Made by a program: the position numbers and the translations under genes. From the IMG/VR virus record IMGVR_UViG_3300023175_000005, positions 1 to 64,000 of that record: a stretch of 64,000 nucleotides of DNA. The stretch is one strand, 5' to 3'. Shown here in pieces: positions 6,514 through 25,469 of the stretch. How positions within the stretch are numbered: position 1 is the stretch's first letter; each line of letters starts with the position of its first letter. Below the pieces are notes generated by a model. It was not told the DNA's origin and ran no database searches. It saw only the letters and a program-made list of their open reading frames with translations.

Positions 6514-6600
6514 GCCTCCATGGTGGAATAGGTAGACACAAGAGACTTAAAATCTCTCGCTGATTACAGCGTCCCAGTTCGAGTCTGGGTGGAGGCACCA
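6514..6600 (+). tRNA. tRNA-Leu (TAA)
   Basis: Acceptor GCCTCCA/TGGAGGC, anticodon arm AGAGA-CTTAAAA-TCTCT, long variable arm, GTTCGAGTC T-loop, encoded CCA. Confidence 0.97.
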
Positions 6601-6613
6601 ATCTTTTTTTGAC

Positions 6614-6690
6614 GGTTGCGTAGCTCAACTGGATAGAGCAACAGACTTCTAATCTGTAGGTTGAGGGTTCGAGTCCTTCCGCAATCGCCA
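6614..6690 (+). tRNA. tRNA-Arg (TCT)
   Basis: Acceptor GGTTGCG/CGCAATC, anticodon arm ACAGA-CTTCTAA-TCTGT, GTTCGAGTC T-loop, encoded CCA. Confidence 0.97.
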
Positions 6691-12026: not shown

Positions 12027-12446
12027 CTAGAGGGGATATTCGAAATTCTGGCAACTTTCTCCTTTGCGTAGAAATGTTGCACCGTTTGAAATATGGAAGC
12101 GTTCTGCCATTTCAGTTAACGGTGATAGTGTAACCATTCGAGAATATAGATCTTGTGCATTGTCTCTTAGTTGGTTAATTATAGTCCTACCTGCACCTTT
12201 GTTATAACTCCAAACAGTATATGCAACACATACCGTACCTTCAGGATCAGATAATTCAAACATTTCTTGTTCTGTAATAGGAACATCTTTACACAGTGCA
12301 AAACACACAACAGCATCTACACGATCGTTGTTTTCAAGCACCACTATGCTTCGACCACCGCCCACACGTTTTTCAAATGGGATATGAGGACGTACTGGAT
12401 CCTCTGTAATTAAATCACGTTCATTAAATGTGATGTTTCTTATCAT
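12027..12446 (-). CDS. GNAT-like phage protein
   Basis: YTVWSYNKGAGR and TLSPLTEMAERFHISNGA resemble GNAT acetyl-CoA motifs. Confidence 0.6.
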   Translation of the reverse strand: MIRNITFNERDLITEDPVRPHIPFEKRVGGGRSIVVLENNDRVDAVVCFALCKDVPITEQEMFELSDPEGTVCVAYTVWSYNKGAGRTIINQLRDNAQDLYSRMVTLSPLTEMAERFHISNGATFLRKGESCQNFEYPL

Positions 12447-13870
12447 TCCTCTGTACCTAAATTATTAATAAATGCTCTAAGCCGAGTTGAATCTGTTTCG
12501 GCTCGAATCTTTCCTACAGTATCACCTTCACTTGGATCTTGTGATACTTCGTCTGGTGCAGTTGGCGAATTGCCACGCTTGAGTTGATCATAGATAGTTG
12601 CTTTGCGTTTGTCAAATTCTTTATAGTCTTCGTCGTCGCCTAAGTCGCGAATACGTAAACTGTCTATGTCAAATTCTAGATCAATTTTTTGTCCAACACC
12701 GCTTGAACTTCTAGTTTTCATTAACTGTATCTGATAGCGCCCACGCTCACGCATTGCTCTACTTGTAAAGATACCTATGAGGTTGTCCGCCGTGTTAATT
12801 TTCGATATACCGCCACTAATATGACTATGGTCAAATTCTATCTCCTCTACTGAACTTCTATTCAACTGAGATGCTGTAACAAAGATACAATTAAGTTCCA
12901 TTGCCAAGTTGCGTAGTTCTTCTGATACATACTTGTCTTTAACAAACAAGTTTTCTGCTGAAATCTTTTGTCCAATTGGATGCATTAGATCCAAATAGTC
13001 TACAAGCACAACATCTACTTTTTTGCCTGTTTTGATTTCATATTCTTTTATATATGCACGTAAGTCATTTGCATTCTTGCCTGTAGGCATATACTTAACT
13101 TGGAATGCACCTGACTTTTTACCAATCATTTTAACTTTCATTTCAACATCATCAATGCTCTTGAAAATGTCTCTGCTTGGAATGTCAGTTGTCATTGAAT
13201 CAAGTCGCATACTAACCAATGCTTCTGAAAGTTCAAATGTAAGATACAATACATTCATTCCTGCTTCACACCAGTTTACACCCATGTTAGCCAAGAACAA
13301 ACTCTTACCTGAACCAGAGCCGCCTGCAAAGATATTCAGTTCGCCTCTGTTGAATCCGCCAAACAGTTTCTTGTCTAGACTTGGCCAACCTGTGCTTACC
13401 TGTCCGTTTTTATCTTTGATGCCTTCTAATCTGCTTCTAGGGTCTGCAAAATAATCTGTACCTAAATCTTTTTGTAGTCCAATCTGTACAGCCTTCTTAA
13501 CTAGGTCTTCAACTGGTCCATACTCACCTTTTTCAAGCAAGTCTGCACTCTTTAAAATTGCTGTCTCTAGTGCTTTGTGTCTTGAAAATGTTTCAAATTC
13601 TGCCAATAACCAATCATAGTGATTTTCTTGTAGTTGCCCTGGATCTTTTAAATTTTGATCTGTTGCTGCGTTGATCATATCAAATGTAGGCAGAGCATTG
13701 TGTTCTTCTACATAGTCTTTGATAAACTTTGCTGGTTCTTGTAAACGTCTGTCAAATGTCTGTGGATCAAATACACCTTGACAGCGCACAAAACTTTCTG
13801 CGTCTGTCATAAACATTTCTAGATATACCTTTTGTATATCATAACCATAATCTGTGTTCTGTCTTGTCAT
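12443..13870 (-). CDS. Replicative DnaB-like helicase (T4 gp41-like)
   Basis: GGSGSGKS, VDYLDL, TASQLNR, MKTR motifs. Confidence 0.95.
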   Translation of the reverse strand: MTRQNTDYGYDIQKVYLEMFMTDAESFVRCQGVFDPQTFDRRLQEPAKFIKDYVEEHNALPTFDMINAATDQNLKDPGQLQENHYDWLLAEFETFSRHKALETAILKSADLLEKGEYGPVEDLVKKAVQIGLQKDLGTDYFADPRSRLEGIKDKNGQVSTGWPSLDKKLFGGFNRGELNIFAGGSGSGKSLFLANMGVNWCEAGMNVLYLTFELSEALVSMRLDSMTTDIPSRDIFKSIDDVEMKVKMIGKKSGAFQVKYMPTGKNANDLRAYIKEYEIKTGKKVDVVLVDYLDLMHPIGQKISAENLFVKDKYVSEELRNLAMELNCIFVTASQLNRSSVEEIEFDHSHISGGISKINTADNLIGIFTSRAMRERGRYQIQLMKTRSSSGVGQKIDLEFDIDSLRIRDLGDDEDYKEFDKRKATIYDQLKRGNSPTAPDEVSQDPSEGDTVGKIRAETDSTRLRAFINNLGTEE

Positions 13871-14201: not shown

Positions 14202-14877
14202 ATTCTTTCCTTAAAAACGGTAATATGATTCTTTTTGTATAGAATCGTTGCTGCTTAGGTGATGGATGATCGTCTCCTGGTACAGTAAACGGTGTGCCTT
14301 GAGATAATGAGAACTCATAGATACTAGGTAAAAATTTACTATGATCTAACATGTCATAAAGATGTTTACATGCAGGATGATCTACAAATTCAAATACTGC
14401 GTCTTTGTAGTTAGTAAAAAAGTATTTTATATTGTTTGCTTGCAAATACCATTGCACTCTCAACATGTGTTCCAGAGTTTCTATTTGGTGTTGTATTTCG
14501 TTGGCCTGTCTAAAATAATCTCTGCACATTTTGTTTTGCCAAAATGCATTAAGCAGTGTCCATGCACCAGTATCGTCCGGATTAAACTTATAGGGATTTG
14601 TAACCCATCCGTCTGCTGGATCACGCCAGTCTTCCATGTTATTGCCATACTTTTCTTTTCTATCAATTCCACTCCACATAACACCAACTAATATATCTCC
14701 ATAGTTGTGATTGTGTAATTTAAAAAGCAAGTCTCTTGATATAATGCCATTTCCTGCGCTAGGCAATCCACAGTGTGTAAGAGGCACATCTAGTGCTATA
14801 GATAACCACTGTGGCCATGTTCGTGGATCCTCACTTGTAGCATCACTAAAACTACAACCGCTACTAATCAATCGCAT
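14176..14877 (-). CDS. SGNH/GDSL hydrolase-like protein
   Basis: GCSFS, SAGN, DDHPS motifs. Confidence 0.7.
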   Translation of the reverse strand: MRLISSGCSFSDATSEDPRTWPQWLSIALDVPLTHCGLPSAGNGIISRDLLFKLHNHNYGDILVGVMWSGIDRKEKYGNNMEDWRDPADGWVTNPYKFNPDDTGAWTLLNAFWQNKMCRDYFRQANEIQHQIETLEHMLRVQWYLQANNIKYFFTNYKDAVFEFVDHPACKHLYDMLDHSKFLPSIYEFSLSQGTPFTVPGDDHPSPKQQRFYTKRIILPFLRKEYGIKRASN

Positions 14878-16328
14878 GTGAAAACTTTTACTCCGTAGTG
14901 CTGTTCAAATTCTTGTGCATCTTCAATTGTATTAACAATAGGTTTGCCTTTGATGTTTAGGCTTGTGTTTAAAAGTATAGGACAGCCTGTTTCTTCATAC
15001 CAACGTTCTAGCAGTTTTCTAAAGCCCACGCTTTGATCTGCAGAAACTGTCTGAACCCTACTGGTGCCGTCCCCGTGGATGATTGCAGGTAGTCCAGTAT
15101 CCTTGCAAGTTGCAGTGTATTGCATAAAGGGTCCGACATGTCCGTCGAAATAGGTAGGCGCATGTTCCTCCAGTACTGCTGGTGCAAATGGTCTAAACTT
15201 CTGTCTTCGTTTGATTTCGTTAACTCTGTCTTTGATGTCTGTACCTCTTGGATCTGCGAGTAGACTTCTGTGTCCAAAGGCTCTAGGGCCAAACTCGGCC
15301 CTGCCATTAGCCACACCAACAATACCAGTAGTAAGTAATTCTTGTAGTGCTTTTTCAACAGGATATTCTCCTTCAATATTATACCCTGTGTACACATGCT
15401 TCAGGGGCATAAATTCTTTTTTGTGTGCAAGTACACACCCAACGCTAGACCCTGCATCACCTGGATTAGGCATTATCCATACGTTGTTAAAAAAGTCATG
15501 GGTAATGTGATTGGCTGAGCAATTTAATGCACACCCTCCCATTAATACAAGATTTTTGCTATCAACTAGGTTGCTGGCTACATCTAATACGCCTTTAAAT
15601 ATCTGCTCATATGCTTTCTGGGTAGCAGCAGCAATGTCAAACATGTCTTGTTCACTAGTAAGATCAGGACGCCACCATAGGCATCCTCTGTGTAAATTTT
15701 GTTTAAAACTTACAGGGTCACCTTTTAAATCAATAAAGTCTTCAACAATATCCTTTAACAATCGATTAGGGTCGCCATAAGCAGCCATACCCATAAGAAT
15801 ATATTCATCTTCTTGAGGCTTTAATCCTAGTCTTTGTGTGAGTGCCGAGTACCATAATCCAACGGAGTTAGGGTACGATCTAGAATAGACCTTTGTGAGT
15901 TTTGTTTCATTTGCTTCCCAGATTGTGAGTGTGTCAAATTCTCCAATACTGTCGATACTAACAACACAGGCTTCTGTAAAAGGACTAGTATAATAACCGG
16001 CAGCAGCATGGGAAAGATGATGATCAGTATACCTAATAGGAACAGATATCCCATAAGATCTAAGATAACGTTTAATATTGTTTTCCCTAAATTTGATCCC
16101 TTGCCCTGCTCGAAACTGTCTAAGAGTTTTGACAAGGGGTCTTTCATACCAAATAACTTCATCTGGTTCTCCCCAACGTTTTGCATACTCTATTAATTTA
16201 TCATTTAAATGCGCATCGTTTTTTACACCACTAAAGCGTTCGCTGTGGCTTGCAAACTCTAATCCGTCATCTGTAAATACTGCTAATGCAGCATCATGGC
16301 TGTTAGCACTTATACCCCATGTAATCAT
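14868..16328 (-). CDS. O-carbamoyltransferase (NodU/CmcH/TobZ family)
   Basis: HDAALA, HHLSHAA, EYILMGMAAYG, GGCALNC, EFGPRAFGHRS, LLNTSLN. Confidence 0.95.
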   Translation of the reverse strand: MITWGISANSHDAALAVFTDDGLEFASHSERFSGVKNDAHLNDKLIEYAKRWGEPDEVIWYERPLVKTLRQFRAGQGIKFRENNIKRYLRSYGISVPIRYTDHHLSHAAAGYYTSPFTEACVVSIDSIGEFDTLTIWEANETKLTKVYSRSYPNSVGLWYSALTQRLGLKPQEDEYILMGMAAYGDPNRLLKDIVEDFIDLKGDPVSFKQNLHRGCLWWRPDLTSEQDMFDIAAATQKAYEQIFKGVLDVASNLVDSKNLVLMGGCALNCSANHITHDFFNNVWIMPNPGDAGSSVGCVLAHKKEFMPLKHVYTGYNIEGEYPVEKALQELLTTGIVGVANGRAEFGPRAFGHRSLLADPRGTDIKDRVNEIKRRQKFRPFAPAVLEEHAPTYFDGHVGPFMQYTATCKDTGLPAIIHGDGTSRVQTVSADQSVGFRKLLERWYEETGCPILLNTSLNIKGKPIVNTIEDAQEFEQHYGVKVFTCD

Positions 16329-16884: not shown

Positions 16885-17003
16885 TTGTAGATGAACGGAT
16901 CTCGTTTCTTCATCTCTGCAAGTTTCTTTTTGAACTCGCGTTCTTCTTTATACCATGTAATAGGCCAAATAATAAATGACCAAATCTTTTTTAAGTAAAC
17001 CAT
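16881..17003 (-). CDS. Small protein, 40 aa ending KKRDPFIYK
   Basis: Translated by hand; DPFIY-ending peptides commonly accompany carbamoyltransferase loci. Confidence 0.6.
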   Translation of the reverse strand: MVYLKKIWSFIIWPITWYKEEREFKKKLAEMKKRDPFIYK

Positions 17004-17986
17004 TTCTTTGCTTTCAATCTTATTTTTAAAGGACTGCTTTCGGCAGCAGAAGTAATACTGTATAGCGTATATAACCTACCGTACTTATCGACTGCATCTC
17101 CTATATCATTTATGTCCTGACTCCAGTCTGGCATACTCACAGACCATCCTAATTCTATTGCACGTTCGACAAGTTTGCTGCCTGCTTTATCTCTATCTGG
17201 AACAACATATATATCTTTTTGAAGTCTATTGAGAAGTAGTGCTTGTGCGTCATTTATATCACTTCCTCCTATAGCACAACCTTCTACGTGTAGTGCATCG
17301 ATCTGTCCTTCACATAATATACAGAATACTTTGTTAGGACCTTGTTCATCTAAATTAAACACATAACCAGGTTGCATGGTAGTTAGGTACTTACTTTTGC
17401 TTTCCCCTATTGCACGGGCTGTATATCCAACTACACGACCTTCGTAGTAGAAAGGTATAATAAGCCTATCACGGTAACCTAAACTAGGCGACCAATAATA
17501 TTCAATATCATCTACACGCAGATTACGTTCTAGCATATATTGAAATACACGCACCATGCGCTGATCTAACTGTCCTGCTTCGACCCACTGGTGCTCTGAT
17601 AGTTTAACGGCATCATCTGGCAACGAGACAGTTTTGAATGAAGGCATTTCGGCAATACGTGTTTTTGCTTCTACGCCTTCATTCTCTCGCATCACTTCAA
17701 GTGCTACCTTGTTGATTATATCGTCAGGTGTACCCATCCATTGTAGTAACTTACGCATCTTGTGTGAAAATGGTCGTCCTGGTTGCCATGAAGCTTTGTA
17801 ACCACAGTTAAAGCAATGATAACTTATACCGCCATCTGTGTTACTTATAAGGCCGCCTCGGCCTCTAGTATCTGCACTATGACCGTTATGATGACAACAA
17901 GACGCATTAAAGGATAGCCACCCGCTAGGCGTTGTTTTACGCTTTTGCGGCAAGAATGTCAGAACTGTATCAGCGACTATACTCAT
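16991..17986 (-). CDS. DNA primase (T4 gp61-like)
   Basis: Zn-binding YHCFNCG, TOPRIM CEGQIDA and PDRD. Confidence 0.92.
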   Translation of the reverse strand: MSIVADTVLTFLPQKRKTTPSGWLSFNASCCHHNGHSADTRGRGGLISNTDGGISYHCFNCGYKASWQPGRPFSHKMRKLLQWMGTPDDIINKVALEVMRENEGVEAKTRIAEMPSFKTVSLPDDAVKLSEHQWVEAGQLDQRMVRVFQYMLERNLRVDDIEYYWSPSLGYRDRLIIPFYYEGRVVGYTARAIGESKSKYLTTMQPGYVFNLDEQGPNKVFCILCEGQIDALHVEGCAIGGSDINDAQALLLNRLQKDIYVVPDRDKAGSKLVERAIELGWSVSMPDWSQDINDIGDAVDKYGRLYTLYSITSAAESSPLKIRLKAKKWFT

Positions 17987-19227: not shown

Positions 19228-19596
19228 ATGTTATTAAAAGAGATAGAAAAACAATTTCCATATATTAGCGTTGTAGCATACGGCGGAAAAGAGTATGTTG
19301 GTATAATCACGAATCAAGATCAAACTGTTACTACAATGTTTGTATATACTGATTTAAAAACAGATAACGATAAAAAACTGTTACTTGATTTAGGAGAAAT
19401 TTGGTGGTGGGAGTCAAATAGAATGTTACCAATTACAACATTCTTAAGAGAAGAAATTTCACCGTTAAAATATTCAATGATGACAATGAATACAAAAGAT
19501 GTAAAAGTTAGTGTCGGACCTTGTGTTAATGTAAACAATTTGACAATTAAAAGAGTCAAAAGAAAAAGTGTTCAATTAATTAAAAAAGTTACTTAA
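19228..19596 (+). CDS. Conserved hypothetical protein (LGEIWWWESNR)
   Basis: 122-aa ORF fills the gap between flanking genes. Confidence 0.75.
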   Translation: MLLKEIEKQFPYISVVAYGGKEYVGIITNQDQTVTTMFVYTDLKTDNDKKLLLDLGEIWWWESNRMLPITTFLREEISPLKYSMMTMNTKDVKVSVGPCVNVNNLTIKRVKRKSVQLIKKVT

Positions 19597-20150
19597 CTTA
19601 GTTGTTCACAAAATAAGTTCATGTGTACAACAACACTTACAGCATATGCAATAGCATGTGCCTTCTTAAAGTAGTAACTACCGTCAGTGGGTGCGATCCA
19701 CACATTTTCTAATATCGTTGGCCAAGTTTCGTTGACAAGATGGCGTTTGGCAGGCCGTATTATCGCTAGTACTGCTGCTAACTGCTCTATGCTCTGCGGC
19801 TTTGTTGTACGGAGTATATCGCCGTGTCCGGAGATATGAAAGATATTGTCTGTAAAATCGTCGTGCTGTAAAAGTTCCCATTGTGGTTCTCTTTCCATTA
19901 GTGTGTGTAAGTGTGTTTCATCTTTTACATCATTATAGATACTAACATTTAAAAAGTCTAGTTTAAAGTAGCCTCTATCTTCTGCTGTTTTGTAATCAAT
20001 AGTAGACAGATTATTCACAGGATTGTGTGGACACTCTGTAACGTATACACCTGTGTTGTGTTTTTTACCTGTATCTAATTTTGCCACACGGTGTTTAATT
20101 TGAGATAATAATACGTCTCGGTTTGCAAAGTCTATATCAATATCAGGCAT
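19593..20150 (-). CDS. Miniature DNA polymerase III alpha (DnaE) catalytic-core protein, 185 aa
   Basis: PDIDIDF, HNTGVY, FKLDFL, IIRPA, FKKAHAIAY; GGAG RBS gives ATG 20150. Confidence 0.85.
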   Translation of the reverse strand: MPDIDIDFANRDVLLSQIKHRVAKLDTGKKHNTGVYVTECPHNPVNNLSTIDYKTAEDRGYFKLDFLNVSIYNDVKDETHLHTLMEREPQWELLQHDDFTDNIFHISGHGDILRTTKPQSIEQLAAVLAIIRPAKRHLVNETWPTILENVWIAPTDGSYYFKKAHAIAYAVSVVVHMNLFCEQLS

Positions 20151-20361
20151 CTTCACGCTCCATTGCATATCTCCACATTTCACTTTCAGGAACACGATTC
20201 CAATGCTTTTCGTCCTCTTTAGGAGTAGCACCGATATACTGTTCACCTGTCTCTCTGTCAATCAATAACCACTTTGCTGGGGCTCTTGTTTTTACAACTA
20301 GTTCAACAGGTTCATCAAGTTCGTAAACTTGTACACCATCTTGTAATTTTCTAAAATTCAT
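20143..20361 (-). CDS. Hypothetical protein
   Basis: Coupled ORF. Confidence 0.75.
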   Translation of the reverse strand: MNFRKLQDGVQVYELDEPVELVVKTRAPAKWLLIDRETGEQYIGATPKEDEKHWNRVPESEMWRYAMEREDA

Positions 20362-21056
20362 AAACTACTTTCTTTAGCAACATCTTTTGCTAATTGTACA
20401 TCTTGTGGTTTACGCTTAAAACGCATTGCCCAGTGTTCTGGGTTTATAACATGATAGACCATTTCAAGTTGTTCGTCATTTAATTTACTTAGCATTTCCT
20501 TGCCACTATTACAATTCAATATTAGCCAAGGACTTATTTTACCGTCTTTTATTTGCCATACTGCTCTGTTTAAACTTACATGTTGAAAGTAATGATTCCA
20601 TGGTGCAGGTTCATTTTCGGCTGCCCATTCCATCATAGTTTTTACACTACGTTCTAGTGCTGTAATTGCATCTTCTTTGAGAATAAATTCTAATGCATAT
20701 TTTTCATACATTTCTTCTCTACACCAATGATCAAGTTTTACATTACTAGTAACAACATAATCAATATACTTGTCAGGGTATAAAGGTCGAACATTATTAA
20801 CAAAACTTCCAAACTTAACAAAAGCATTATAGAAACTGCTTTTGACAAAACCTTCATATGTTTTTTCTTTTCTATGCCCAGCACTTAGTTTGTAAAATCT
20901 TTGAAATGCATAAAATCCTAATTGCACACGTTTTTCATCTTTTTGCAACCATCTACGTTTAGGCTCGCACATATGAGCAAGTAAAGTTTTTTCTCTAGTA
21001 TAGCCTGTGTTACAGTACTCACAAACATATGGCTTAGGGTTTGTATTCGACGCCAT
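20358..21056 (-). CDS. Zn-finger hypothetical protein
   Basis: CEYC...HMC at the N-terminus. Confidence 0.7.
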   Translation of the reverse strand: MASNTNPKPYVCEYCNTGYTREKTLLAHMCEPKRRWLQKDEKRVQLGFYAFQRFYKLSAGHRKEKTYEGFVKSSFYNAFVKFGSFVNNVRPLYPDKYIDYVVTSNVKLDHWCREEMYEKYALEFILKEDAITALERSVKTMMEWAAENEPAPWNHYFQHVSLNRAVWQIKDGKISPWLILNCNSGKEMLSKLNDEQLEMVYHVINPEHWAMRFKRKPQDVQLAKDVAKESSL

Positions 21057-21501
21057 GTTCTTTAGCCAATTCTTTGAGTTCTTTTTTTGTAGATATTCTA
21101 GCAAGTAATTCTACCTCGTCCATCTTCATTTCAGGATATATTTGCGATAGCATTTTTACTGCCTTGCTACTATCATCCTTTTTCTTTTTCAATCCAATCC
21201 AAGGATGAAATTCTTTTTTTCCTGTTTTACCTGCGACACATAAAAGCTGCCATTGCAGTTTAATATGGTTAGTACCGCCTAGCACATTCCAATTTTTGTT
21301 ATAGTATTCATTAACTTTGAAAACTGCTAATGCTTGCTTTTCATAACTGCCTTTGACACTGCTTATATAACGATTAAGATTCCACAAGTCAAGTTTAATA
21401 TCTTTCTTACCATCGTCGCCGGCAGCATCATAAAGTTCTTTAATTCCCATATCAATAGCAGGAATTAACTCCTTAAATAAATCTAGTTCTTTGTTTGCCA
21501 A
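21034..21501 (-). CDS. Probable clamp loader small subunit (gp62-like)
   Basis: NRYIS...VNEY...LQWQLL...HPWI pattern, size, replication context. Confidence 0.55.
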   Translation of the reverse strand: MANKELDLFKELIPAIDMGIKELYDAAGDDGKKDIKLDLWNLNRYISSVKGSYEKQALAVFKVNEYYNKNWNVLGGTNHIKLQWQLLCVAGKTGKKEFHPWIGLKKKKDDSSKAVKMLSQIYPEMKMDEVELLARISTKKELKELAKEHGVEYKP

Positions 21502-22157
21502 AGTTCAACATCCTCAGGTGAGTTTATCTCTACACCATTAAATTGTACACTAGAACAATGGATTTGCCAACCATTTTTTAACCAACGTAATTGTTCAAGA
21601 CCCTCTAGTTCTTCTTCTATAGGAACATCTAATGTTGGATATTGTTCTAATGCTTCTCTTGTATATCCATATATTCCTATATGCCAATCGCCATATCCAG
21701 TTGTTCCTCTGCCAAACCATAATGCACGATCACCAGTTCTAATAAGTTTGACACTATTAGGATCGTTTTTCATTTCATCTGGCATTTCTGTATAAGCAGT
21801 TACTACATTATAATTTTCTAATTGTTGTTTTACAGATAATATTATATCCTCTGTAATATCGGGCATATCACCTTGTACATTTATAAAATGTGTGTAGTCT
21901 TTTAATTTTTCTTGTCTTAAAGATATACCGCATCTTTCAGTTCCATTCATTGCATCATCAGTGTAAATTACGTTAGCATAGGGAATTTGGTGTGCAACTT
22001 TTCTACTATCTGTTATAACATATGTATCAATACCTGTTGCAGTACACTTGTTGTAAACTCTATTTACTAGCGGCACACCATTTAACATTGCAAGTGGTTT
22101 GTTTGGAAATCGTGTGCTGCCTATTCTAGCGGGTATAAGAATAGCGTACGATGTCAT
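21483..22157 (-). CDS. kdsB: 3-deoxy-manno-octulosonate cytidylyltransferase
   Basis: IPARIGSTRFPNKPL, NGTER, NVQGD, HIGIYGY, LEQLRWL. Confidence 0.95.
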   Translation of the reverse strand: MTSYAILIPARIGSTRFPNKPLAMLNGVPLVNRVYNKCTATGIDTYVITDSRKVAHQIPYANVIYTDDAMNGTERCGISLRQEKLKDYTHFINVQGDMPDITEDIILSVKQQLENYNVVTAYTEMPDEMKNDPNSVKLIRTGDRALWFGRGTTGYGDWHIGIYGYTREALEQYPTLDVPIEEELEGLEQLRWLKNGWQIHCSSVQFNGVEINSPEDVELWQTKN

Positions 22158-22890
22158 ATACCACCTCCTCAAAATCATCTAGTCGAAGCATATTCGGACC
22201 GTCGCTTGGTGCGTTATCAGGCAGTTTGTGAACTTCGAGGAAGAAATTTGATATCCCGAGAGCAGCCCCGCTACGACTGAAGCCAGGCACAAGATCACGA
22301 TTGCCGCCACTGCTAGTACCCTGTCCTCCGGGTTTTTGGGCAGCGTGAGTACAATCCAACACGATAGGAACAGGAAGATTGTTGAGCATCCAATCAAGGC
22401 CGCTGTAATCAACAACAAGGGTGTTATATCCAAAACTTGTTCCTCTTTCTGTGATCCAAACTTCTTTTGCTTCCGCACACTTACTTAGTATTCCTTTGAC
22501 ATCCCAAGGCGCTAAAAACTGTCCTTTTTTAATATTTACAATGCAATCTGTTGCACATGCTGCTTGAATTAAATCTGTTTGACGACATAAGAATGCAGGA
22601 ATTTGTAAGACATCTACAATGTGTGTCAAGTATTGTATTTGATCTCTTTCATGTATATCTGTTACAATTTTTAGATTAGGAATTTCTTCTTTCATATCAA
22701 GAAAATCTCTAACTGTATCATGTAAGCCTCTGCCTCGCTTACCATCTACACTTGTGCGATTTGCTTTATCAAAACTGGCTTTGAAATAATAATCAATACC
22801 TAGTTTATTGCATACACGTTTACATTCTTTTGCAATTTCTAAACTTTGTTCTAGTGTTTCGTGCTGACACGGACCTGCAATTATTCTCAT
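22126..22890 (-). CDS. kdsA: KDO-8-phosphate synthase
   Basis: IAGPC, KASFDKANRTS, QIPAFLCRQTDL, KKGQF, ERGTSFGY, SDGP. Confidence 0.97.
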   Translation of the reverse strand: MRIIAGPCQHETLEQSLEIAKECKRVCNKLGIDYYFKASFDKANRTSVDGKRGRGLHDTVRDFLDMKEEIPNLKIVTDIHERDQIQYLTHIVDVLQIPAFLCRQTDLIQAACATDCIVNIKKGQFLAPWDVKGILSKCAEAKEVWITERGTSFGYNTLVVDYSGLDWMLNNLPVPIVLDCTHAAQKPGGQGTSSGGNRDLVPGFSRSGAALGISNFFLEVHKLPDNAPSDGPNMLRLDDFEEVVYDIVRYSYTR

Positions 22891-23159
22891 TTTGCATCCT
22901 TTATAATATAATACATTGTAACTGTTTTATCAAGTTGCTTCATCAAACTTTTATTTTGCATTGCTAATTCACATAATTCTTTCCAACTACCATAATCCAA
23001 CAACTCGCCTTGTGCTCGTGCAATTGCTCCAGGATCGCCACCAACAATCCATTTTGGATATTTGTTATATGGTGCATCTCGATACCTTGCCCATACAACT
23101 CCGTTAGTACGTTCGTATATTAGTGCAGCACCGGGAACAAGCTTATGTTGCTGAGCCAA
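22887..23159 (-). CDS. Hypothetical protein
   Basis: Coupled ORF. Confidence 0.7.
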   Translation of the reverse strand: MAQQHKLVPGAALIYERTNGVVWARYRDAPYNKYPKWIVGGDPGAIARAQGELLDYGSWKELCELAMQNKSLMKQLDKTVTMYYIIKDAK

Positions 23160-23487
23160 CAGTCTTCCTTACTATATCATTATGATTAAACTCTGCCCAG
23201 TATAGTTCAAATGCTACACCGTCTTCAAGTCCTTCAAACTGATGAATTACACCTGGCTTGACTTGCGTAAAGTCTCCTGGCCCAAGGATAGTTTCATCTA
23301 TTAGATCATAATCTTTTTGCCATACACGAACAAGCATTTTGCCTGACTCTACAAAGAAGCCATTCCATTTAAATCTATGTTCGTGCTCGCTACATTTGTA
23401 GCCACCTTTAAACTCAATACGGTGAAACTCTAACACACCGTTAGCGTGGATAAGTTCAGTTTGTCCCCAAATCTTTCCTGCTTTCAT
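23143..23487 (-). CDS. Cupin-domain protein (sugar isomerase-like)
   Basis: CSEHEH...VKPGVIHQF; AGGAG RBS gives ATG 23487. Confidence 0.8.
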   Translation of the reverse strand: MKAGKIWGQTELIHANGVLEFHRIEFKGGYKCSEHEHRFKWNGFFVESGKMLVRVWQKDYDLIDETILGPGDFTQVKPGVIHQFEGLEDGVAFELYWAEFNHNDIVRKTVGSAT

Positions 23488-23497
23488 TTTAGTCTCC

Positions 23498-24004
23498 TTA
23501 TAATAATTTTCCGTGATCAATAATTTCACTTTGTCTACTGATATCTTTAACAAAGAATGCACACAGGCTGTTTTCTTTTTCCTCGATAGGTACAGCAAGC
23601 AACTGACCTGATTTCATTTTAGGAAAAAACCATTTTACATCATTATAAAAGTTTACAGTTTCTATATGTAAAAATTGAGGCAAAGTGCCTGTAATAGGAT
23701 TGAAAACAAACGCTTCAAATCCTCTATCATTTAAACTTGTTAACGGTAACACTTCTAAGTCGCTACCTGCTTGATTACATCCTACAGCAATGCACCAATC
23801 TAAAGGCATTGTGACTTCGCTTTCGCCTATTTGTAAAACTATAGCAGGTGAATTAAAAGATTCTAAAAAAATCATAGGATTAAAAAAGAAGTCCGGATCT
23901 GCTGGATTGCTATTATCTAGCACTGCAAATCTAATAGCATCGTCTACAGTATTAGGCACATTATTCATATCAAAGGTTGTATTGTCTAGTGTAAGTATTC
24001 TCAT
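23498..24004 (-). CDS. Conserved hypothetical protein
   Basis: 168-aa ORF next to UvsW. Confidence 0.75.
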   Translation of the reverse strand: MRILTLDNTTFDMNNVPNTVDDAIRFAVLDNSNPADPDFFFNPMIFLESFNSPAIVLQIGESEVTMPLDWCIAVGCNQAGSDLEVLPLTSLNDRGFEAFVFNPITGTLPQFLHIETVNFYNDVKWFFPKMKSGQLLAVPIEEKENSLCAFFVKDISRQSEIIDHGKLL

Positions 24005-24005
24005 T

Positions 24006-25469
24006 TTATTTCCAATCTACTTTTTCTATAGTGAAAGGATATTGTGCTTCCTTATAGAATTTTTTGCGCTGTGTTAAATGTCTCTTTGCAAATTTGCACG
24101 TTGAAGTGATATCCCAAATTTGTACAAAGTCTTTGTCCTTTGCCTTTCTTACGCCTCTGCCTATAGATTGAATAACTCTTACGAATGATTTGCCTGGTTC
24201 TATGAGAACAAGATTAAAAATACGAGGAATATTAATGCCGACGGCAGCAACGCCATACGTAGCAATGACCACGTGATTTGTTCCTTCGTTAATTTCGTCA
24301 TATGCGTCCTTTCTATCTTTTAATTTTACATCGCCTTTAACAAAAACTGATCCTGGAATAAGTTCTTGTAACATTTCGCCTGCACTAATTCTATCTACTA
24401 GAATAAGTGTATTGCCTGATTCTTTTACACTGTTTAATATTTTGCCTATATATTCTACTCTTTCTTTATTTGTAACTAGATATTTTAATTCTTCTTGATA
24501 GTTACTATGTGCAACAGTATCCATTAGTTGCACAATATTAACATGACACTGCGCAAGTACGCCCTTGTCTTGTAATTCTTTTGCTGATATTTCACCGATA
24601 ACTGGACCTAAACTTGCATGTATACTTTCAAATTCAAACTTTTCTTTAGGTATAGTTCCTGTTAGTCCCCAACGTATTGGTGCATTTTTTAAGTTACGTG
24701 TTAATAAATTTTTCAATACTTCCGCTTTTGCTTGATGAACCTCATCAACAATAACGGTGCTCACACCATCTAAGAACTCTGCAAGCGATAGTACTGCGGA
24801 ACCGTCCTTGTGCTTCTTGTCAAGTATATTCAAACTTTGCCAAGTGCAGATGGTGTGAGTCTTACCCAACTCTTTTCTATCTCCAAAATAAACCCCTACA
24901 TCAAGTCCGCAATTAATGTAATCTTCTTCTGTTTGTGTTACAAGAGATTTGTTTGGTACAATAACAAGACTGCGTCCATACTTTTCACTCATATGTGATA
25001 GTGTAGCAGTTGTAATAGTTTTGCCAGCGCCTGTTGCAATCTGTTGTAGGCTTTGTGGATTGTTTGCAAAGTTGTTGATTGCTTCTACTTGATAGTCACG
25101 CAGAATAATTTCTTCACCTTCAGCAGGATGTCCTTTGGGCCAACGCACACCTTGGTCAGCCCAGTAGCGTTCCGTTACTTGATCAAAACTTAAATCAATA
25201 GGATGTCGTCTGTCTTCAATGTCAACTATTTGAACATTGTTTTTTGCAAGCACTTCGGTAACAGTATCTAAATGATTAACATAGCCAGTACCGCCGATAC
25301 CAAAGAAAGCAACTTTGCCGTCCCACCTGCCAAGTTTATACTGTGGCATATATCGTGCGTATGGCACTTCAAACTTGAGAGCGTTGGAAAGTTTACGGCG
25401 TACATCTACGTCTAAACCTTCTAGTTTGATGTTTACTTCATCTTCAATAATTAATTTGCAACTAGCCAT
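24006..25469 (-). CDS. uvsW: SF2 helicase UvsW-like
   Basis: LRDYQ, ATGAGKT, DEVH, GLTGT, QSIGRGVR. Confidence 0.92.
   Translation of the reverse strand: MASCKLIIEDEVNIKLEGLDVDVRRKLSNALKFEVPYARYMPQYKLGRWDGKVAFFGIGGTGYVNHLDTVTEVLAKNNVQIVDIEDRRHPIDLSFDQVTERYWADQGVRWPKGHPAEGEEIILRDYQVEAINNFANNPQSLQQIATGAGKTITTATLSHMSEKYGRSLVIVPNKSLVTQTEEDYINCGLDVGVYFGDRKELGKTHTICTWQSLNILDKKHKDGSAVLSLAEFLDGVSTVIVDEVHQAKAEVLKNLLTRNLKNAPIRWGLTGTIPKEKFEFESIHASLGPVIGEISAKELQDKGVLAQCHVNIVQLMDTVAHSNYQEELKYLVTNKERVEYIGKILNSVKESGNTLILVDRISAGEMLQELIPGSVFVKGDVKLKDRKDAYDEINEGTNHVVIATYGVAAVGINIPRIFNLVLIEPGKSFVRVIQSIGRGVRKAKDKDFVQIWDITSTCKFAKRHLTQRKKFYKEAQYPFTIEKVDWK

What the first reader, a model, noticed from the sequence alone, without database searches (positions are those of the whole stretch)
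19593..20150. 185-aa minimal DnaE retaining all three catalytic aspartates
Seen: PDIDIDF, FKLDFL, HxxGVY, IRP and FxKxHAxAY appear in DnaE order with the intervening regions deleted; there is no PHP, OB or clamp-binding domain, and neighbours show no recognisable DnaE motifs. Established: DnaE is about 1100 aa and its palm is a Pol-beta-like nucleotidyltransferase. Inference: a repurposed stand-alone nucleotidyltransferase or one subunit of a split enzyme, rather than a pseudogene.
Basis: partly seen in the sequence, partly recalled or inferred. Interest (0 to 1): 0.6.

Follow-up and report, generated by a model that had tools for sequence, protein, structure and literature searches.

The report
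Half of a split mini-polymerase
This 185-residue phage protein is a real, conserved gene, but it is only the metal-binding half of a two-piece miniature version of the bacterial replicative DNA polymerase; that kind was described by computation in 2021, and the other half is encoded about 230 kb away in the same phage genome.

Summary
Window 19593-20150 (-) is a 185-aa ORF that starts at MPDIDIDF and carries the DnaE motifs in DnaE order, with no PHP, thumb, clamp-binding or OB part.

It is not a stand-alone enzyme and not a pseudogene. It is the C-terminal subunit of the "minimal, split DNA polymerase III alpha" that Iyer et al. (Viruses 2021, PMC7824862) described in group 2.2 jumbo phages (RaK2, 121Q, PA5oct, Atu_ph07).

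- **Partner:** a 176-aa protein carrying the GRGS motif lies outside the window at G000:C1:250683-251213 (-). It ends at ...EFLR, exactly where this ORF picks up in DnaE.
- **Selection:** both halves are under purifying selection (dN/dS 0.14 and 0.11).
- **Conservation:** D3, D5, D7, K63 and D65 are invariant across 53 diverse relatives.
- **Co-occurrence:** both halves were found in every isolate genome checked.
- **Predicted binding:** score 0.93, best control 0.01.

New here:
- A small natural lineage in which the two halves are one 375-376-aa protein. Its model superposes on Pol III alpha (Z 20.7).
- A map showing the thumb replaced by about 22 residues.

Catalysis is untested. Verdict: a new member of a known, biochemically uncharacterised kind.

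The parts
19593..20150 (-). CDS of the C-terminal (metal-binding and template-binding) subunit of the split minimal Pol III alpha; 185 aa plus stop
   Evidence: Translation. PHROG 11778, E 2e-59. About 50% identity to the PA5oct and Paride homologues. dN/dS 0.14. Predicted to bind the N subunit.
20127..20147 (-). Codons for P2-F8 (PDIDIDF): the palm strand with the metal-binding aspartates D3, D5 and D7
   Evidence: Invariant in 6 distant isolates (A1) and in 53 diverse representatives (A5). Aligns to MPDIDIDF of M. tuberculosis DnaE1, 413-420. Predicted to pair with N-subunit residues 139-150, which hold GRGS.
20043..20060 (-). Codons for H31-Y36 (HNTGVY), a palm motif equivalent to HAAGVVI of DnaE
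   Evidence: hhalign puts residue 31 on DnaE 507. Residues 9-30 therefore stand where DnaE has about 100 residues of thumb. H31 and G34 are invariant or nearly so.
19950..19967 (-). Codons for F62-L67 (FKLDFL): the palm strand with K63 and the third catalytic aspartate D65
   Evidence: K63 and D65 are invariant. The stretch aligns to LLKMDFLGL of DnaE.
19596..19955 (-). Codons for residues 66-185: a shortened proximal fingers region with IRP (131-133) and FKKAHAIAY (161-169)
   Evidence: In the AlphaFold2 model this part has pLDDT about 90. VIA-align puts residues 65-185 on E. coli Pol III alpha 559-780 (Z 8.5, rmsd 3.3, 119 aligned); all rows with Z of 5 or more are C-family polymerases. R132 and P133 are invariant in both alignments; K135, K162, K163, H165 and Y169 are invariant among the six isolates, and K135, K163 and H165 nearly so among 53 representatives.
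19228..19596 (+). Context only: a convergent 122-aa ORF (PHROG 11637) whose 3' end overlaps the CDS by 4 bases. It is conserved next to the C subunit in all relatives, and its function is unknown.
   Evidence: Present tail-to-tail in nearly all of the 80 related loci (absent only where the locus ends just past the gene), in RaK2, 121Q, Atu_ph07, Slicko01 and PA5oct, and beside the unsplit form. No family or Atlas lead. Not shown to be part of the enzyme.
20358..21056 (-). Context only: a conserved upstream 232-aa protein with a weak N-terminal C2H2 zinc-finger match (PHROG 11058)
   Evidence: PHROG E 4e-63; Pfam zf-C2H2 is below cut-off. Syntenic in all 80 loci, separated from the C subunit by a variable slot of 0-2.4 kb. 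Not shown to be part of the enzyme.
16991..17986 (-). Context only: DNA primase (gp61 type). Together with the DnaB-type helicase (12443-13870) and a UvsW-type helicase (24006-25469) it places the gene inside the replication module.
   Evidence: PHROG 47, 19 and 16. Same order as in RaK2, 121Q, Atu_ph07 and Paride.

Best explanation
The ORF encodes the C-terminal subunit of a two-subunit, minimal C-family (Pol III alpha-like) polymerase. This enzyme is typical of RaK2/PA5oct/Atu_ph07-type ('group 2.2') large phages.

**What each subunit supplies**
- The C subunit (this ORF) supplies the metal-binding aspartates (D3/D5/D7 and D65), K63, and a shortened fingers region.
- The N subunit supplies the first half of the Pol-beta-type palm, including the GRGS loop that holds the triphosphate of the incoming nucleotide. 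It is a separate 176-aa protein encoded at G000:C1:250683-251213 (-), about 230 kb away in the record and outside the window.

**How they join**
- The two chains assemble non-covalently into one active site, with no intein.
- The last strand region of the N subunit pairs with the PDIDIDF strand of the C subunit.

**What is shown and what is inferred**
- Shown here: homology, the exact complementarity of the two genes, their co-occurrence, purifying selection, a natural fusion, and a confident predicted complex.
- Inferred: the heterodimer is a template-dependent DNA polymerase that works beside the phage's family B polymerase. It has no thumb, clamp-binding motif or exonuclease. That suggests short, distributive synthesis, such as extending primers made by the neighbouring primase, gap filling or repair.
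For: 1. **A second DnaE piece in the same genome.** PF07733 positions 14-94, E 8e-13, above Pfam's cut-off, in a 176-aa ORF that ends ...GVGRGSS...EFLR. hhalign puts it on DnaE 208-389, ending at ERFLN (93%, E 3e-7). The window ORF starts at the MPDIDIDF that follows in DnaE at 396.
2. **Prior description.** Iyer et al. 2021 describe this arrangement in group 2.2 jumbo phages.
3. **Both genes in the isolates.** Both are in PA5oct, Paride, RaK2, 121Q, Atu_ph07, Phosso, XaC1, CBB and many others, 11-224 kb apart. Five of five genomes tested with the N profile were positive, including the 141-kb phage Slicko01. In IMG/VR there are at least 563 C relatives and 512 N relatives.
4. **A conserved split point.** All five distant N subunits read stop within 3 residues of the EFL(K/R/E) motif or its counterpart.
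5. **Selection.** dN/dS median is 0.14 for C (413 pairs) and 0.11 for N (1137 pairs). D3, D5, D7, K63, D65, R132 and P133 are invariant in 53 representatives of 50%-identity clusters.
6. **Folding alone versus together.** Alone, the C subunit's residues 1-69 have pLDDT under 50.
7. **Predicted complex.** With the N subunit the score is 0.93 in three runs against a best control of 0.01. That mark was reached by 58 of 80 solved complexes and 2 of 110 mismatched pairs. Partner pLDDT is 94 and the runs agree in at least 99% of contacts. Contacts include N 139-150 with C 2-9.
8. **A natural fusion.** Unsplit 375-376-aa proteins (P0220, P0273, P0274) carry the N half at 22-181 (99.3%, E 1e-20) and the C half at 190-370. 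They come from four independent assemblies.
9. **Fold of the fusion.** Its AlphaFold2 model (pLDDT 83) matches only C-family polymerases strongly. Foldseek gives E 9e-8. VIA-align gives Z 20.7, rmsd 3.1, 286 aligned, on M. tuberculosis DnaE1 303-800. The next family scores Z 3.7.
10. **Genome type.** The genome has a family B polymerase in an 898-aa ORF. The gene sits in the replication module between a UvsW-type helicase and primase/DnaB.
Against: - No biochemical or genetic test exists, here or in the literature searched.
- The predicted interface copies an intramolecular contact of solved Pol III alpha structures. The high score may therefore reflect memory of that fold rather than proof that these chains bind.
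- The thumb is absent, as is the finger segment between the IRP and FKKxH motifs. By my recollection of the Taq and E. coli structures (not tested here), that segment carries arginines that hold the triphosphate in DnaE. Processive or even templated synthesis is therefore not assured.
- The record is only 72% complete by CheckV, so the absence of other DnaE parts is not proven for this genome.
- Metatranscriptome contigs cover the gene but cannot show transcription.
Confidence: 0.85

Rival explanations
1. The N+C heterodimer forms, but it is not a templated DNA polymerase. It would be a nucleotidyltransferase of another kind: terminal transferase-like tailing, primer-independent synthesis, synthesis of a nucleotide signal, or a step tied to the modified DNA of these phages.
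For: - The thumb and much of the fingers, which hold primer-template DNA in Pol III alpha, are missing.
- There is no clamp-binding or exonuclease part.
- The phage already has a full family B replicase.
- PA5oct-type phages appear to carry a modified G (PMC12191111). That is a coincidence of lineage only, not a link.
Against: - The retained part is specifically palm plus proximal fingers of C-family polymerases: Z 20.7, against 3.7 or less for CCA-adding enzymes, MenT, Rel and Pol beta.
- Finger motifs IRP and FxKxHxxxY stay invariant or nearly so.
- The gene sits among primase and helicase genes.
Confidence: 0.1
2. One reading: the 185-aa protein works on its own as a repurposed stand-alone nucleotidyltransferase.
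For: It keeps all the acidic residues and is strongly conserved. No partner is encoded next to it.
Against: - It lacks the G-S nucleotide-binding loop and the first half of the palm, which are in the N subunit.
- Alone, its palm strands are modelled at pLDDT under 50.
- The N subunit is present in every related isolate genome checked, and in one lineage it is fused to the C half.
Confidence: 0.03
3. The two pieces are decay products of a once intact dnaE, or they are joined after translation by a split intein, as in cyanobacterial DnaE.
For: DnaE is split and trans-spliced in cyanobacteria (my own knowledge: Wu, Hu and Liu 1998). The two phage genes are far apart.
Against: - Decay: dN/dS is 0.11-0.14, lengths are uniform (176-177 aa and 183-222 aa), there are at least 8000 clusters of relatives, and the split point is strictly conserved.
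- Intein: the N subunit aligns to DnaE up to its last residue and the C subunit from its first. That leaves no room for intein halves, and no Hint or intein family is hit.
Confidence: 0.02

Closest known systems
Split minimal DNA polymerase III alpha of group 2.2 jumbo phages (Iyer, Anantharaman, Krishnan, Burroughs, Aravind, Viruses 2021, PMC7824862); the C half is PHROG 11778
   Same: - Same family: 50% identity to the PA5oct/Paride protein and 33-47% to Atu_ph07, 121Q, RaK2 and Slicko01.
- Same split into an N-terminal NTP-binding protein and a C-terminal Mg/template-binding protein encoded far apart.
- Same genome type, with a family B polymerase, gp41/gp61 and a UvsW-type helicase.
- Same local gene order.
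   Different: - This copy comes from an uncultivated salt-marsh phage record, and its clade starts exactly at MPDIDIDF without the 4-13-residue leader of the isolates.
- Not in the 2021 text as far as I could search it: an unsplit 375-aa lineage, and occurrence in a 141-kb non-jumbo phage.
Bacterial C-family replicative polymerases (DnaE / Pol III alpha, DnaE1, PolC)
   Same: - Pol-beta-type palm with the GRGS loop, the PDxDxDF strand, HxxGV and the KxD strand.
- Proximal fingers with RP and FxKSHxxxY.
- The unsplit relative superposes on E. coli 275-773, M. tuberculosis 303-800, Taq 289-830 and PolC 820-1288 (Z 14-21).
   Different: - About 361 residues in two chains, against about 1100-1400 in one.
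- No PHP domain, no distal fingers, no clamp-binding motif, no OB fold and no tau-binding part.
- The thumb (about 100 residues) is replaced by about 22 residues.
- It accompanies a family B polymerase rather than being the sole replicase.
Intein-split DnaE of cyanobacteria (dnaE-n / dnaE-c, protein trans-splicing; my own knowledge)
   Same: A C-family polymerase encoded by two genes far apart on the chromosome.
   Different: - There the halves carry split-intein parts and are ligated into a full-length DnaE, and the break lies in the fingers.
- Here there is no intein sequence, the break lies inside the palm between the GS loop and the DxD strand, and the product is a minimal enzyme.
Other split phage replicases: split family B polymerase of chimalliviruses (PMC13648687, title and abstract seen) and gp43A/gp43B of some T4-like phages (my own knowledge)
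   Same: A phage DNA polymerase made of separately encoded pieces that must assemble.
   Different: Those are a different, unrelated polymerase family (B), and they are the main replicase. Here the split enzyme is an extra C-family polymerase.

Membership tests
Split minimal Pol III alpha of group 2.2 jumbo phages (Iyer et al. 2021) | A C-terminal protein of about 185-220 aa with the DxDxD strand, the KxD strand and proximal fingers | tested here: met
   P0001 is 185 aa. PHROG 11778, E 2e-59, covers profile positions 8-194 of 197. D3, D5, D7, K63, D65, R132 and P133 are invariant.
Split minimal Pol III alpha of group 2.2 jumbo phages (Iyer et al. 2021) | A separate N-terminal protein with the NTP-binding GRGS motif, encoded at a distant locus of the same genome | tested here: met
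   A 176-aa ORF at G000:C1:250683-251213 (-). PF07733 E 8e-13, 49.1 bits against a cut-off of 23.9. It is about 230 kb from the C gene in the record.
Split minimal Pol III alpha of group 2.2 jumbo phages (Iyer et al. 2021) | A host genome of the T4-like group 2.2 type: family B polymerase, gp41/gp61-type helicase and primase, UvsW-type helicase | tested here: met
   PolB in an 898-aa ORF. Primase, DnaB-like and UvsW-like helicases around the gene. Gene order matches RaK2, 121Q, Atu_ph07 and Paride.
Split minimal Pol III alpha of group 2.2 jumbo phages (Iyer et al. 2021) | No other Pol III alpha domain in the genome | tested here: met
   There is no PF02811 match, and PF07733 and PF17657 hit only the two pieces, in the 256.6-kb record. 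The record is 72% complete, so this is not final.
Split minimal Pol III alpha of group 2.2 jumbo phages (Iyer et al. 2021) | The two proteins reconstitute one enzyme | tested here: inconclusive
   In silico only. Complex score 0.93 against a best control of 0.01; that mark was reached by 58 of 80 solved complexes and 2 of 110 mismatched pairs. A natural fusion exists. Binding and catalysis need the bench.
Canonical C-family replicative polymerase (DnaE/PolC) | A Pol-beta-type palm with the GS loop and three acidic residues in one chain | tested here: not met
   The GS loop is in the N subunit and the acidic residues are in the C subunit. The palm is complete only in the pair, or in the rare unsplit form.
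Canonical C-family replicative polymerase (DnaE/PolC) | An N-terminal PHP domain | tested here: not met
   No PF02811 match in either piece or anywhere in the record; the control genomes were 14 of 14 positive.
Canonical C-family replicative polymerase (DnaE/PolC) | A thumb domain and full fingers | tested here: not met
   Residues 9-30 stand for DnaE 404-506. About 290 model residues cover a span of about 500 residues of Pol III alpha, ending near E. coli 773-780.
Canonical C-family replicative polymerase (DnaE/PolC) | A clamp-binding motif, OB fold and tau-binding C-terminus | tested here: not met
   The protein ends within the fingers. There are no further Pfam hits, and the structural alignment stops at E. 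coli 780.
Intein-split DnaE (trans-splicing) | Split-intein halves at the junction of the two gene products | tested here: not met
   The N subunit aligns to DnaE to its last residue and the C subunit from its first. No Hint or intein family is hit.
Stand-alone Pol-beta-fold nucleotidyltransferases (CCA-adding enzymes, MenT, CD-NTases, Rel) | The G[GS] loop and the DxD strand in one small protein; closest fold among these families | tested here: not met
   The C subunit lacks the GS loop. Even the unsplit model scores Z 3.7 or less against these families, compared with 12-21 for C-family polymerases.

The most novel reading that the evidence does not exclude
The pair is a working, template-dependent DNA polymerase and the smallest C-family polymerase known: about 361 residues, with no thumb, clamp contact or proofreading. 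It serves the T4-like replisome beside PolB, for example by taking over primers from the primase encoded two genes away, as DnaE does for PolC in Bacillus (my own knowledge), or by filling gaps.

The rare 375-aa single-chain lineage found here would then be a natural, ready-made minimal catalytic core. It would show by experiment what a C-family active site needs at the least. It would also bear on the claim of Iyer et al. that this form resembles the ancestor of Pol III alpha.
Probability: 0.4. Interest if true: 0.6.

Novelty: new member of a known kind. Interest (0 to 1): 0.38.

Why it matters
The kind is known only from sequence analysis; nobody has shown that it polymerises anything.

If it does, it defines the minimal catalytic core of the polymerase family that replicates all bacteria. 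It would also add a second, unrelated polymerase to the T4-type replisome of a very widespread group of large phages. That group has at least 8000 protein clusters at 90% identity in public data.

For this window the practical result is an annotation. The ORF is the C-terminal subunit of a split Pol III alpha-like enzyme, and its partner lies outside the window. The unsplit lineage offers an easier construct for the first biochemical test.

Tried and rejected
- **Foldseek on the lone C subunit.** It gave no significant match (E above 1), although Pol III alpha chains topped the list. The VIA second look and the unsplit model were needed.
- **A joint alignment of fused, C and N rows (A4).** MAFFT put the N pieces on the C half. 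I discarded it and used A5 instead, so the N half of the unsplit model rests on 3 sequences only.
- **Adjacent-gene idea.** The 200-aa gene just upstream of the C piece in L185 is not an N piece (hhalign 0.2%). The closest split relatives of the fused lineage are therefore not 'adjacent halves'.
- **MT836213.** Its match to the N subunit is an ordinary full-length 1157-aa DnaE, not a fused mini form. I used it only as a reference for numbering.
- **Co-replacement test.**
  - A sister genome (G002) is about 93-99% identical in the flanking proteins, but only 73% in the C subunit and 75-81% in the N subunit.
  - Nucleotide profiles show that such divergent patches are common nearby, so this is only a hint of co-replacement.
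- **Neighbours as extra subunits.** No family, Atlas or fold lead was found for the convergent 122-aa ORF or the zinc-finger protein. Synteny alone is weak because the whole module is syntenic.
- **Expression.** The PA5oct omics paper does not mention the genes in its text. Neither PA5oct gene is marked as a virion protein. Contigs from four salt-marsh metatranscriptomes cover the gene, but contigs in RNA libraries do not show transcription.
- **Rooting.** The unsplit clade is nested among split forms in a midpoint-rooted tree. No usable outgroup was tried, so the direction (re-fusion or ancestral state) is not settled.
- **Procedural.** No other genetic code was used. Read laying was given 5501 letters.
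Full report
**1. What is in the sequence**

Window 19593-20150 on the minus strand is an ORF of 185 codons plus stop.
- PDIDIDF at residues 2-8
- HNTGVY at 31-36
- FKLDFL at 62-67
- IRP at 131-133
- FKKAHAIAY at 161-169

The ORF table also offers a longer frame from a TTG at 20261. In 80 related loci, however, the gene starts at the same M, with ATG in 64 of them. In most of them at most five codons are open upstream of it. The start overlaps the stop of a 72-aa upstream ORF.

**2. Homology to DnaE**

The resemblance is real but remote.
- Pfam gives only a sub-threshold hit to the Pol III finger domain (15.9 bits, cut-off 22).
- PHROGs places the protein in family 11778, a 197-position family labelled 'DNA polymerase' (E 2e-59). 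It also matches the full-length Pol III family 405 more weakly (E 1.3e-5).
- Against PDB sequences, the single protein and a family profile give collinear pieces on M. tuberculosis DnaE1: 413-423, 567-664 and 772-787. The profile E-value is 0.0039.
- Against a full-length 1157-aa DnaE found in a phage-collection scaffold, hhalign aligns residues 31-135 with DnaE 507-633 (E 1.7e-5). MPDIDIDF corresponds to DnaE 396-403.
- It follows that 22 residues stand where DnaE has about 100 residues of thumb.

**3. The source genome**

The window is the first 64 kb of a 256,558-bp IMG/VR virus record. It is classed as linear and CheckV puts it at 72% complete. Public runs that hold it are salt-marsh metagenomes.

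The nearest cultured relatives of the protein are large phages:
- PA5oct and Paride of Pseudomonas: 50% identity
- Atu_ph07 and Phosso of rhizobia: 47-49%
- the RaK2/121Q group of enterobacteria: 36-39%

The gene sits in a replication module. On the minus strand the order is:
- a UvsW-type helicase (24006-25469);
- several small genes;
- a zinc-finger-like 232-aa protein;
- the ORF itself;
- a convergent 122-aa ORF;
- a virion-type protein;
- primase (16991-17986);
- a DnaB-type helicase (12443-13870).

The same order holds in 80 related metagenomic loci and in RaK2, 121Q, Atu_ph07, Paride and the 141-kb phage Slicko01. The genome also encodes a family B polymerase in an 898-aa ORF.

**4. The partner gene**

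A search of the whole record with the Pfam model of the Pol III alpha palm found one more piece, far outside the window. It is a 176-aa ORF at G000:C1:250683-251213 (-). It matches PF07733 positions 14-94 at E 8e-13, above the curated cut-off.
- It contains GVGRGSS and ends ...LDWREFLR.
- In DnaE the same stretch reads GPGRGS...ERFLN, followed six residues later by MPDIDVDF.
- hhalign puts the 176-aa protein on DnaE 208-389 (93%, E 3e-7).

The two genes are therefore exact complements. One ends, and the other begins, in the loop between the nucleotide-binding GS motif and the metal-binding strand of the Pol-beta-type palm. Neither protein has room for intein parts, and no Hint or intein family is hit.

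**5. Prior description**

Iyer et al. [quoted passage not shown] They suggest it may cooperate with the family B enzyme in synthesis of one strand or in repair.

I found no later paper in the held library that tests it. A 2026 review of jumbo phages does not mention it. The finding is thus the C-terminal half of a kind known by computation only.

**6.

*Conservation.*
- In six members down to 33% identity, D3, D5, D7, K63, D65, R132, P133, K135, K162, K163, H165 and Y169 are invariant.
- In 53 representatives of 50%-identity clusters, D3, D5, D7, K63, D65, R132 and P133 are invariant.

*Length.*
- Complete relatives are 183-222 aa.
- N subunits of the window's clade are 176-177 aa.
- N subunits of distant isolates are 169-180 aa. 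All five stop within three residues of the EFL(K/R/E) motif or its counterpart.

*Selection.*
- Nei-Gojobori dN/dS has a median of 0.14 for the C subunit (413 pairs with dS 0.05-1.5).
- It has a median of 0.11 for the N subunit (1137 pairs).

*Abundance.*
- The exhaustive profile search gave 476 representatives, 112 of them at E of 1e-30 or better.
- IMG/VR holds at least 563 C and 512 N relatives.

These are not decay products.

**7. Evidence that the halves work together**

- **Co-occurrence.**
  - Both genes appear in the printed lists for more than 40 phage records.
  - A profile of the N subunit found an ORF of 169-182 aa in five of five genomes that have the C subunit.
  - A 100%-complete 357-kb IMG/VR record has both.
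  - The genes are 11 kb (Slicko01) to about 224 kb (Phosso) apart.
- **Folding.** AlphaFold2 folds the C subunit alone with confidence only from residue 70 on. The palm strands (1-69) stay under pLDDT 50.
- **Predicted complex.**
  - With the N subunit, the score is 0.93 in all three runs, against 0.01 for the best of three controls. That mark was reached by 58 of 80 solved complexes and 2 of 110 mismatched pairs.
  - Partner pLDDT is 94 and the runs agree in at least 99% of contacts.
  - N 139-150 (the GRGS region) lies against C 2-9 (PDIDIDFA), and N 70-79 lies against C 37-45 and 59-62.
  - The tool's caution applies. This interface copies an intramolecular contact of solved Pol III alpha structures, so the pass shows likeness rather than binding.
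- **A natural fusion.**
  - The exhaustive search returned one 375-aa protein (P0220). Its residues 190-370 match the C profile, and its residues 22-181 match the N profile (99.3%, E 1e-20).
  - A word search added two more, of 376 aa and 78-81% identity.
  - The gene was assembled independently in four samples, in contigs of 25-27% GC.
  - It is followed by the same convergent small ORF and by a relative of the virion-type protein, so it sits at the C-subunit locus.

**8. The fold of the whole minimal enzyme**

The unsplit protein folds with mean pLDDT 83 and pTM 0.75. The palm strands are now above 90.
- Foldseek's first 19 PDB matches are all C-family polymerases (E 9e-8 to 8e-3). Other Pol-beta-fold enzymes follow at E above 0.25.
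- VIA-align puts model residues 77-375 on:
  - M. tuberculosis DnaE1 303-800 (Z 20.7, rmsd 3.1 A, 286 aligned);
  - Taq Pol III alpha 289-830 (Z 20.6);
  - PolC 820-1288 (Z 19.5);
  - E. coli Pol III alpha 275-773 (Z 14-15).
- The next family, CCA-adding enzymes, reaches Z 3.7.

The enzyme is thus palm plus proximal fingers. About 290 residues cover a 500-residue span of Pol III alpha. It has no PHP, thumb, distal fingers, clamp-binding motif or OB fold.

**9. Mechanism**

*Shown:* the two proteins together hold every element of the C-family active site, namely the GS loop, the acidic residues, the lysine and the finger motifs. Neither holds them alone.

*Inferred:* they assemble non-covalently and catalyse template-directed DNA synthesis. 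Without a thumb, a clamp contact or proofreading, such an enzyme should be distributive.

Its constant place next to primase and helicase genes suggests a replisome role. It might extend primers before hand-over to the family B polymerase, or fill gaps. This remains a guess. The main rival is that the pair performs another kind of nucleotidyl transfer. The specific retention of polymerase finger motifs and the replication context speak against that, but only an assay can decide.

**10. Direction of the fusion**

In a tree of 101 C halves (quick IQ-TREE search, midpoint root), the three unsplit proteins form one clade (SH-aLRT 100). That clade is nested in a clade of 12-14 rows (support 93-94) whose other members are ordinary split C subunits of 197-222 aa. 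Together with the strictly conserved split point, this favours a secondary re-fusion. The root was not fixed with an outgroup, so an ancestral unsplit state is not excluded.

**11. Verdict**

- The kind is already in the literature (2021, computational). This copy is a new member from an uncultivated salt-marsh phage.
  - the location of the partner gene;
  - the exact junction;
  - the map of the thumb deletion;
  - selection and conservation figures;
  - a predicted complex with controls;
  - presence in a 141-kb phage;
  - the unsplit lineage.
- Interest is moderate. The enzyme remains untested, and it would define the minimal core of the bacterial replicase family.

Noticed in passing
L181:1066-2193, L182:519-1649, L183:1827-2957, L184:1292-2422 (proteins P0220, P0274, P0273): A natural unsplit form of the minimal Pol III alpha: 375-376 aa, with the N half at 22-181 and the C half at 190-370. 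It was found in four independent metagenome assemblies of 25-27% GC and sits at the C-subunit locus. It is nested among split forms in a midpoint-rooted tree. The text of the 2021 paper does not mention it, as far as I could search it.
   Followed up: yes
window 19650-20050, and L001:1610-1900 (G000:C1 about 250795-251085), compared with L012 and L088: A sister genome (G002) is about 93-99% identical in the flanking proteins but only 73% in the C subunit and 75-81% in the N subunit. Both halves carry a divergent mosaic patch. Similar patches occur elsewhere nearby (for example window 22500-23200, 21800-22100 and 17200-17500), so concerted replacement of the two halves is only a hint.
   Followed up: partly
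window 20143-20361 (-), and the same slot in L004-L083: The space between the zinc-finger-like gene and the C subunit is a variable slot of 0 to about 2.4 kb among relatives. The window's 72-aa ORF there recurs in only about 7 of 80 loci. One metatranscriptome contig joins 20150 directly to 20624.
   Followed up: partly
window 19228-19596 (+): A 122-aa ORF on the opposite strand overlaps the 3' end of the C-subunit gene by 4 bases. This tail-to-tail pair is kept from this phage to RaK2, 121Q, Atu_ph07, PA5oct and Slicko01, and beside the unsplit form. No family, fold or function lead was found.
   Followed up: partly
window 21483-22178 (-), 22126-22890 (-), 23143-23598 (-), 14868-16328 (-): Sugar-metabolism genes are interspersed in the replication module: a cytidylyltransferase (CTP_transf_3, E 1e-19), a DAHP/KDO8P-synthase-family enzyme (E 6e-53), a cupin and a carbamoyltransferase (E 1e-50). 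They look like auxiliary genes for a sugar acid or cell-surface sugar pathway.
   Followed up: no
window 6514-6600 (+) and 6614-6690 (+): Two tRNA genes, tRNA-Leu (TAA) and tRNA-Arg (TCT), both reading A-ending codons. This fits the low GC (29-45%) of the phage.
   Followed up: no
L087 and L180 (Alishewanella phage vB_AspM_Slicko01, OQ508956.1): Both halves of the split enzyme occur, 11 kb apart, in a 141-kb phage. The system is therefore not confined to genomes over 200 kb.
   Followed up: partly
P0256 (233 aa): One database protein joins the first 115 residues of a C subunit to an unrelated C-terminal part. It is probably a frameshift or an assembly chimera. Many shorter representatives (63-170 aa) look like genes cut by contig ends rather than decay.
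   Followed up: no
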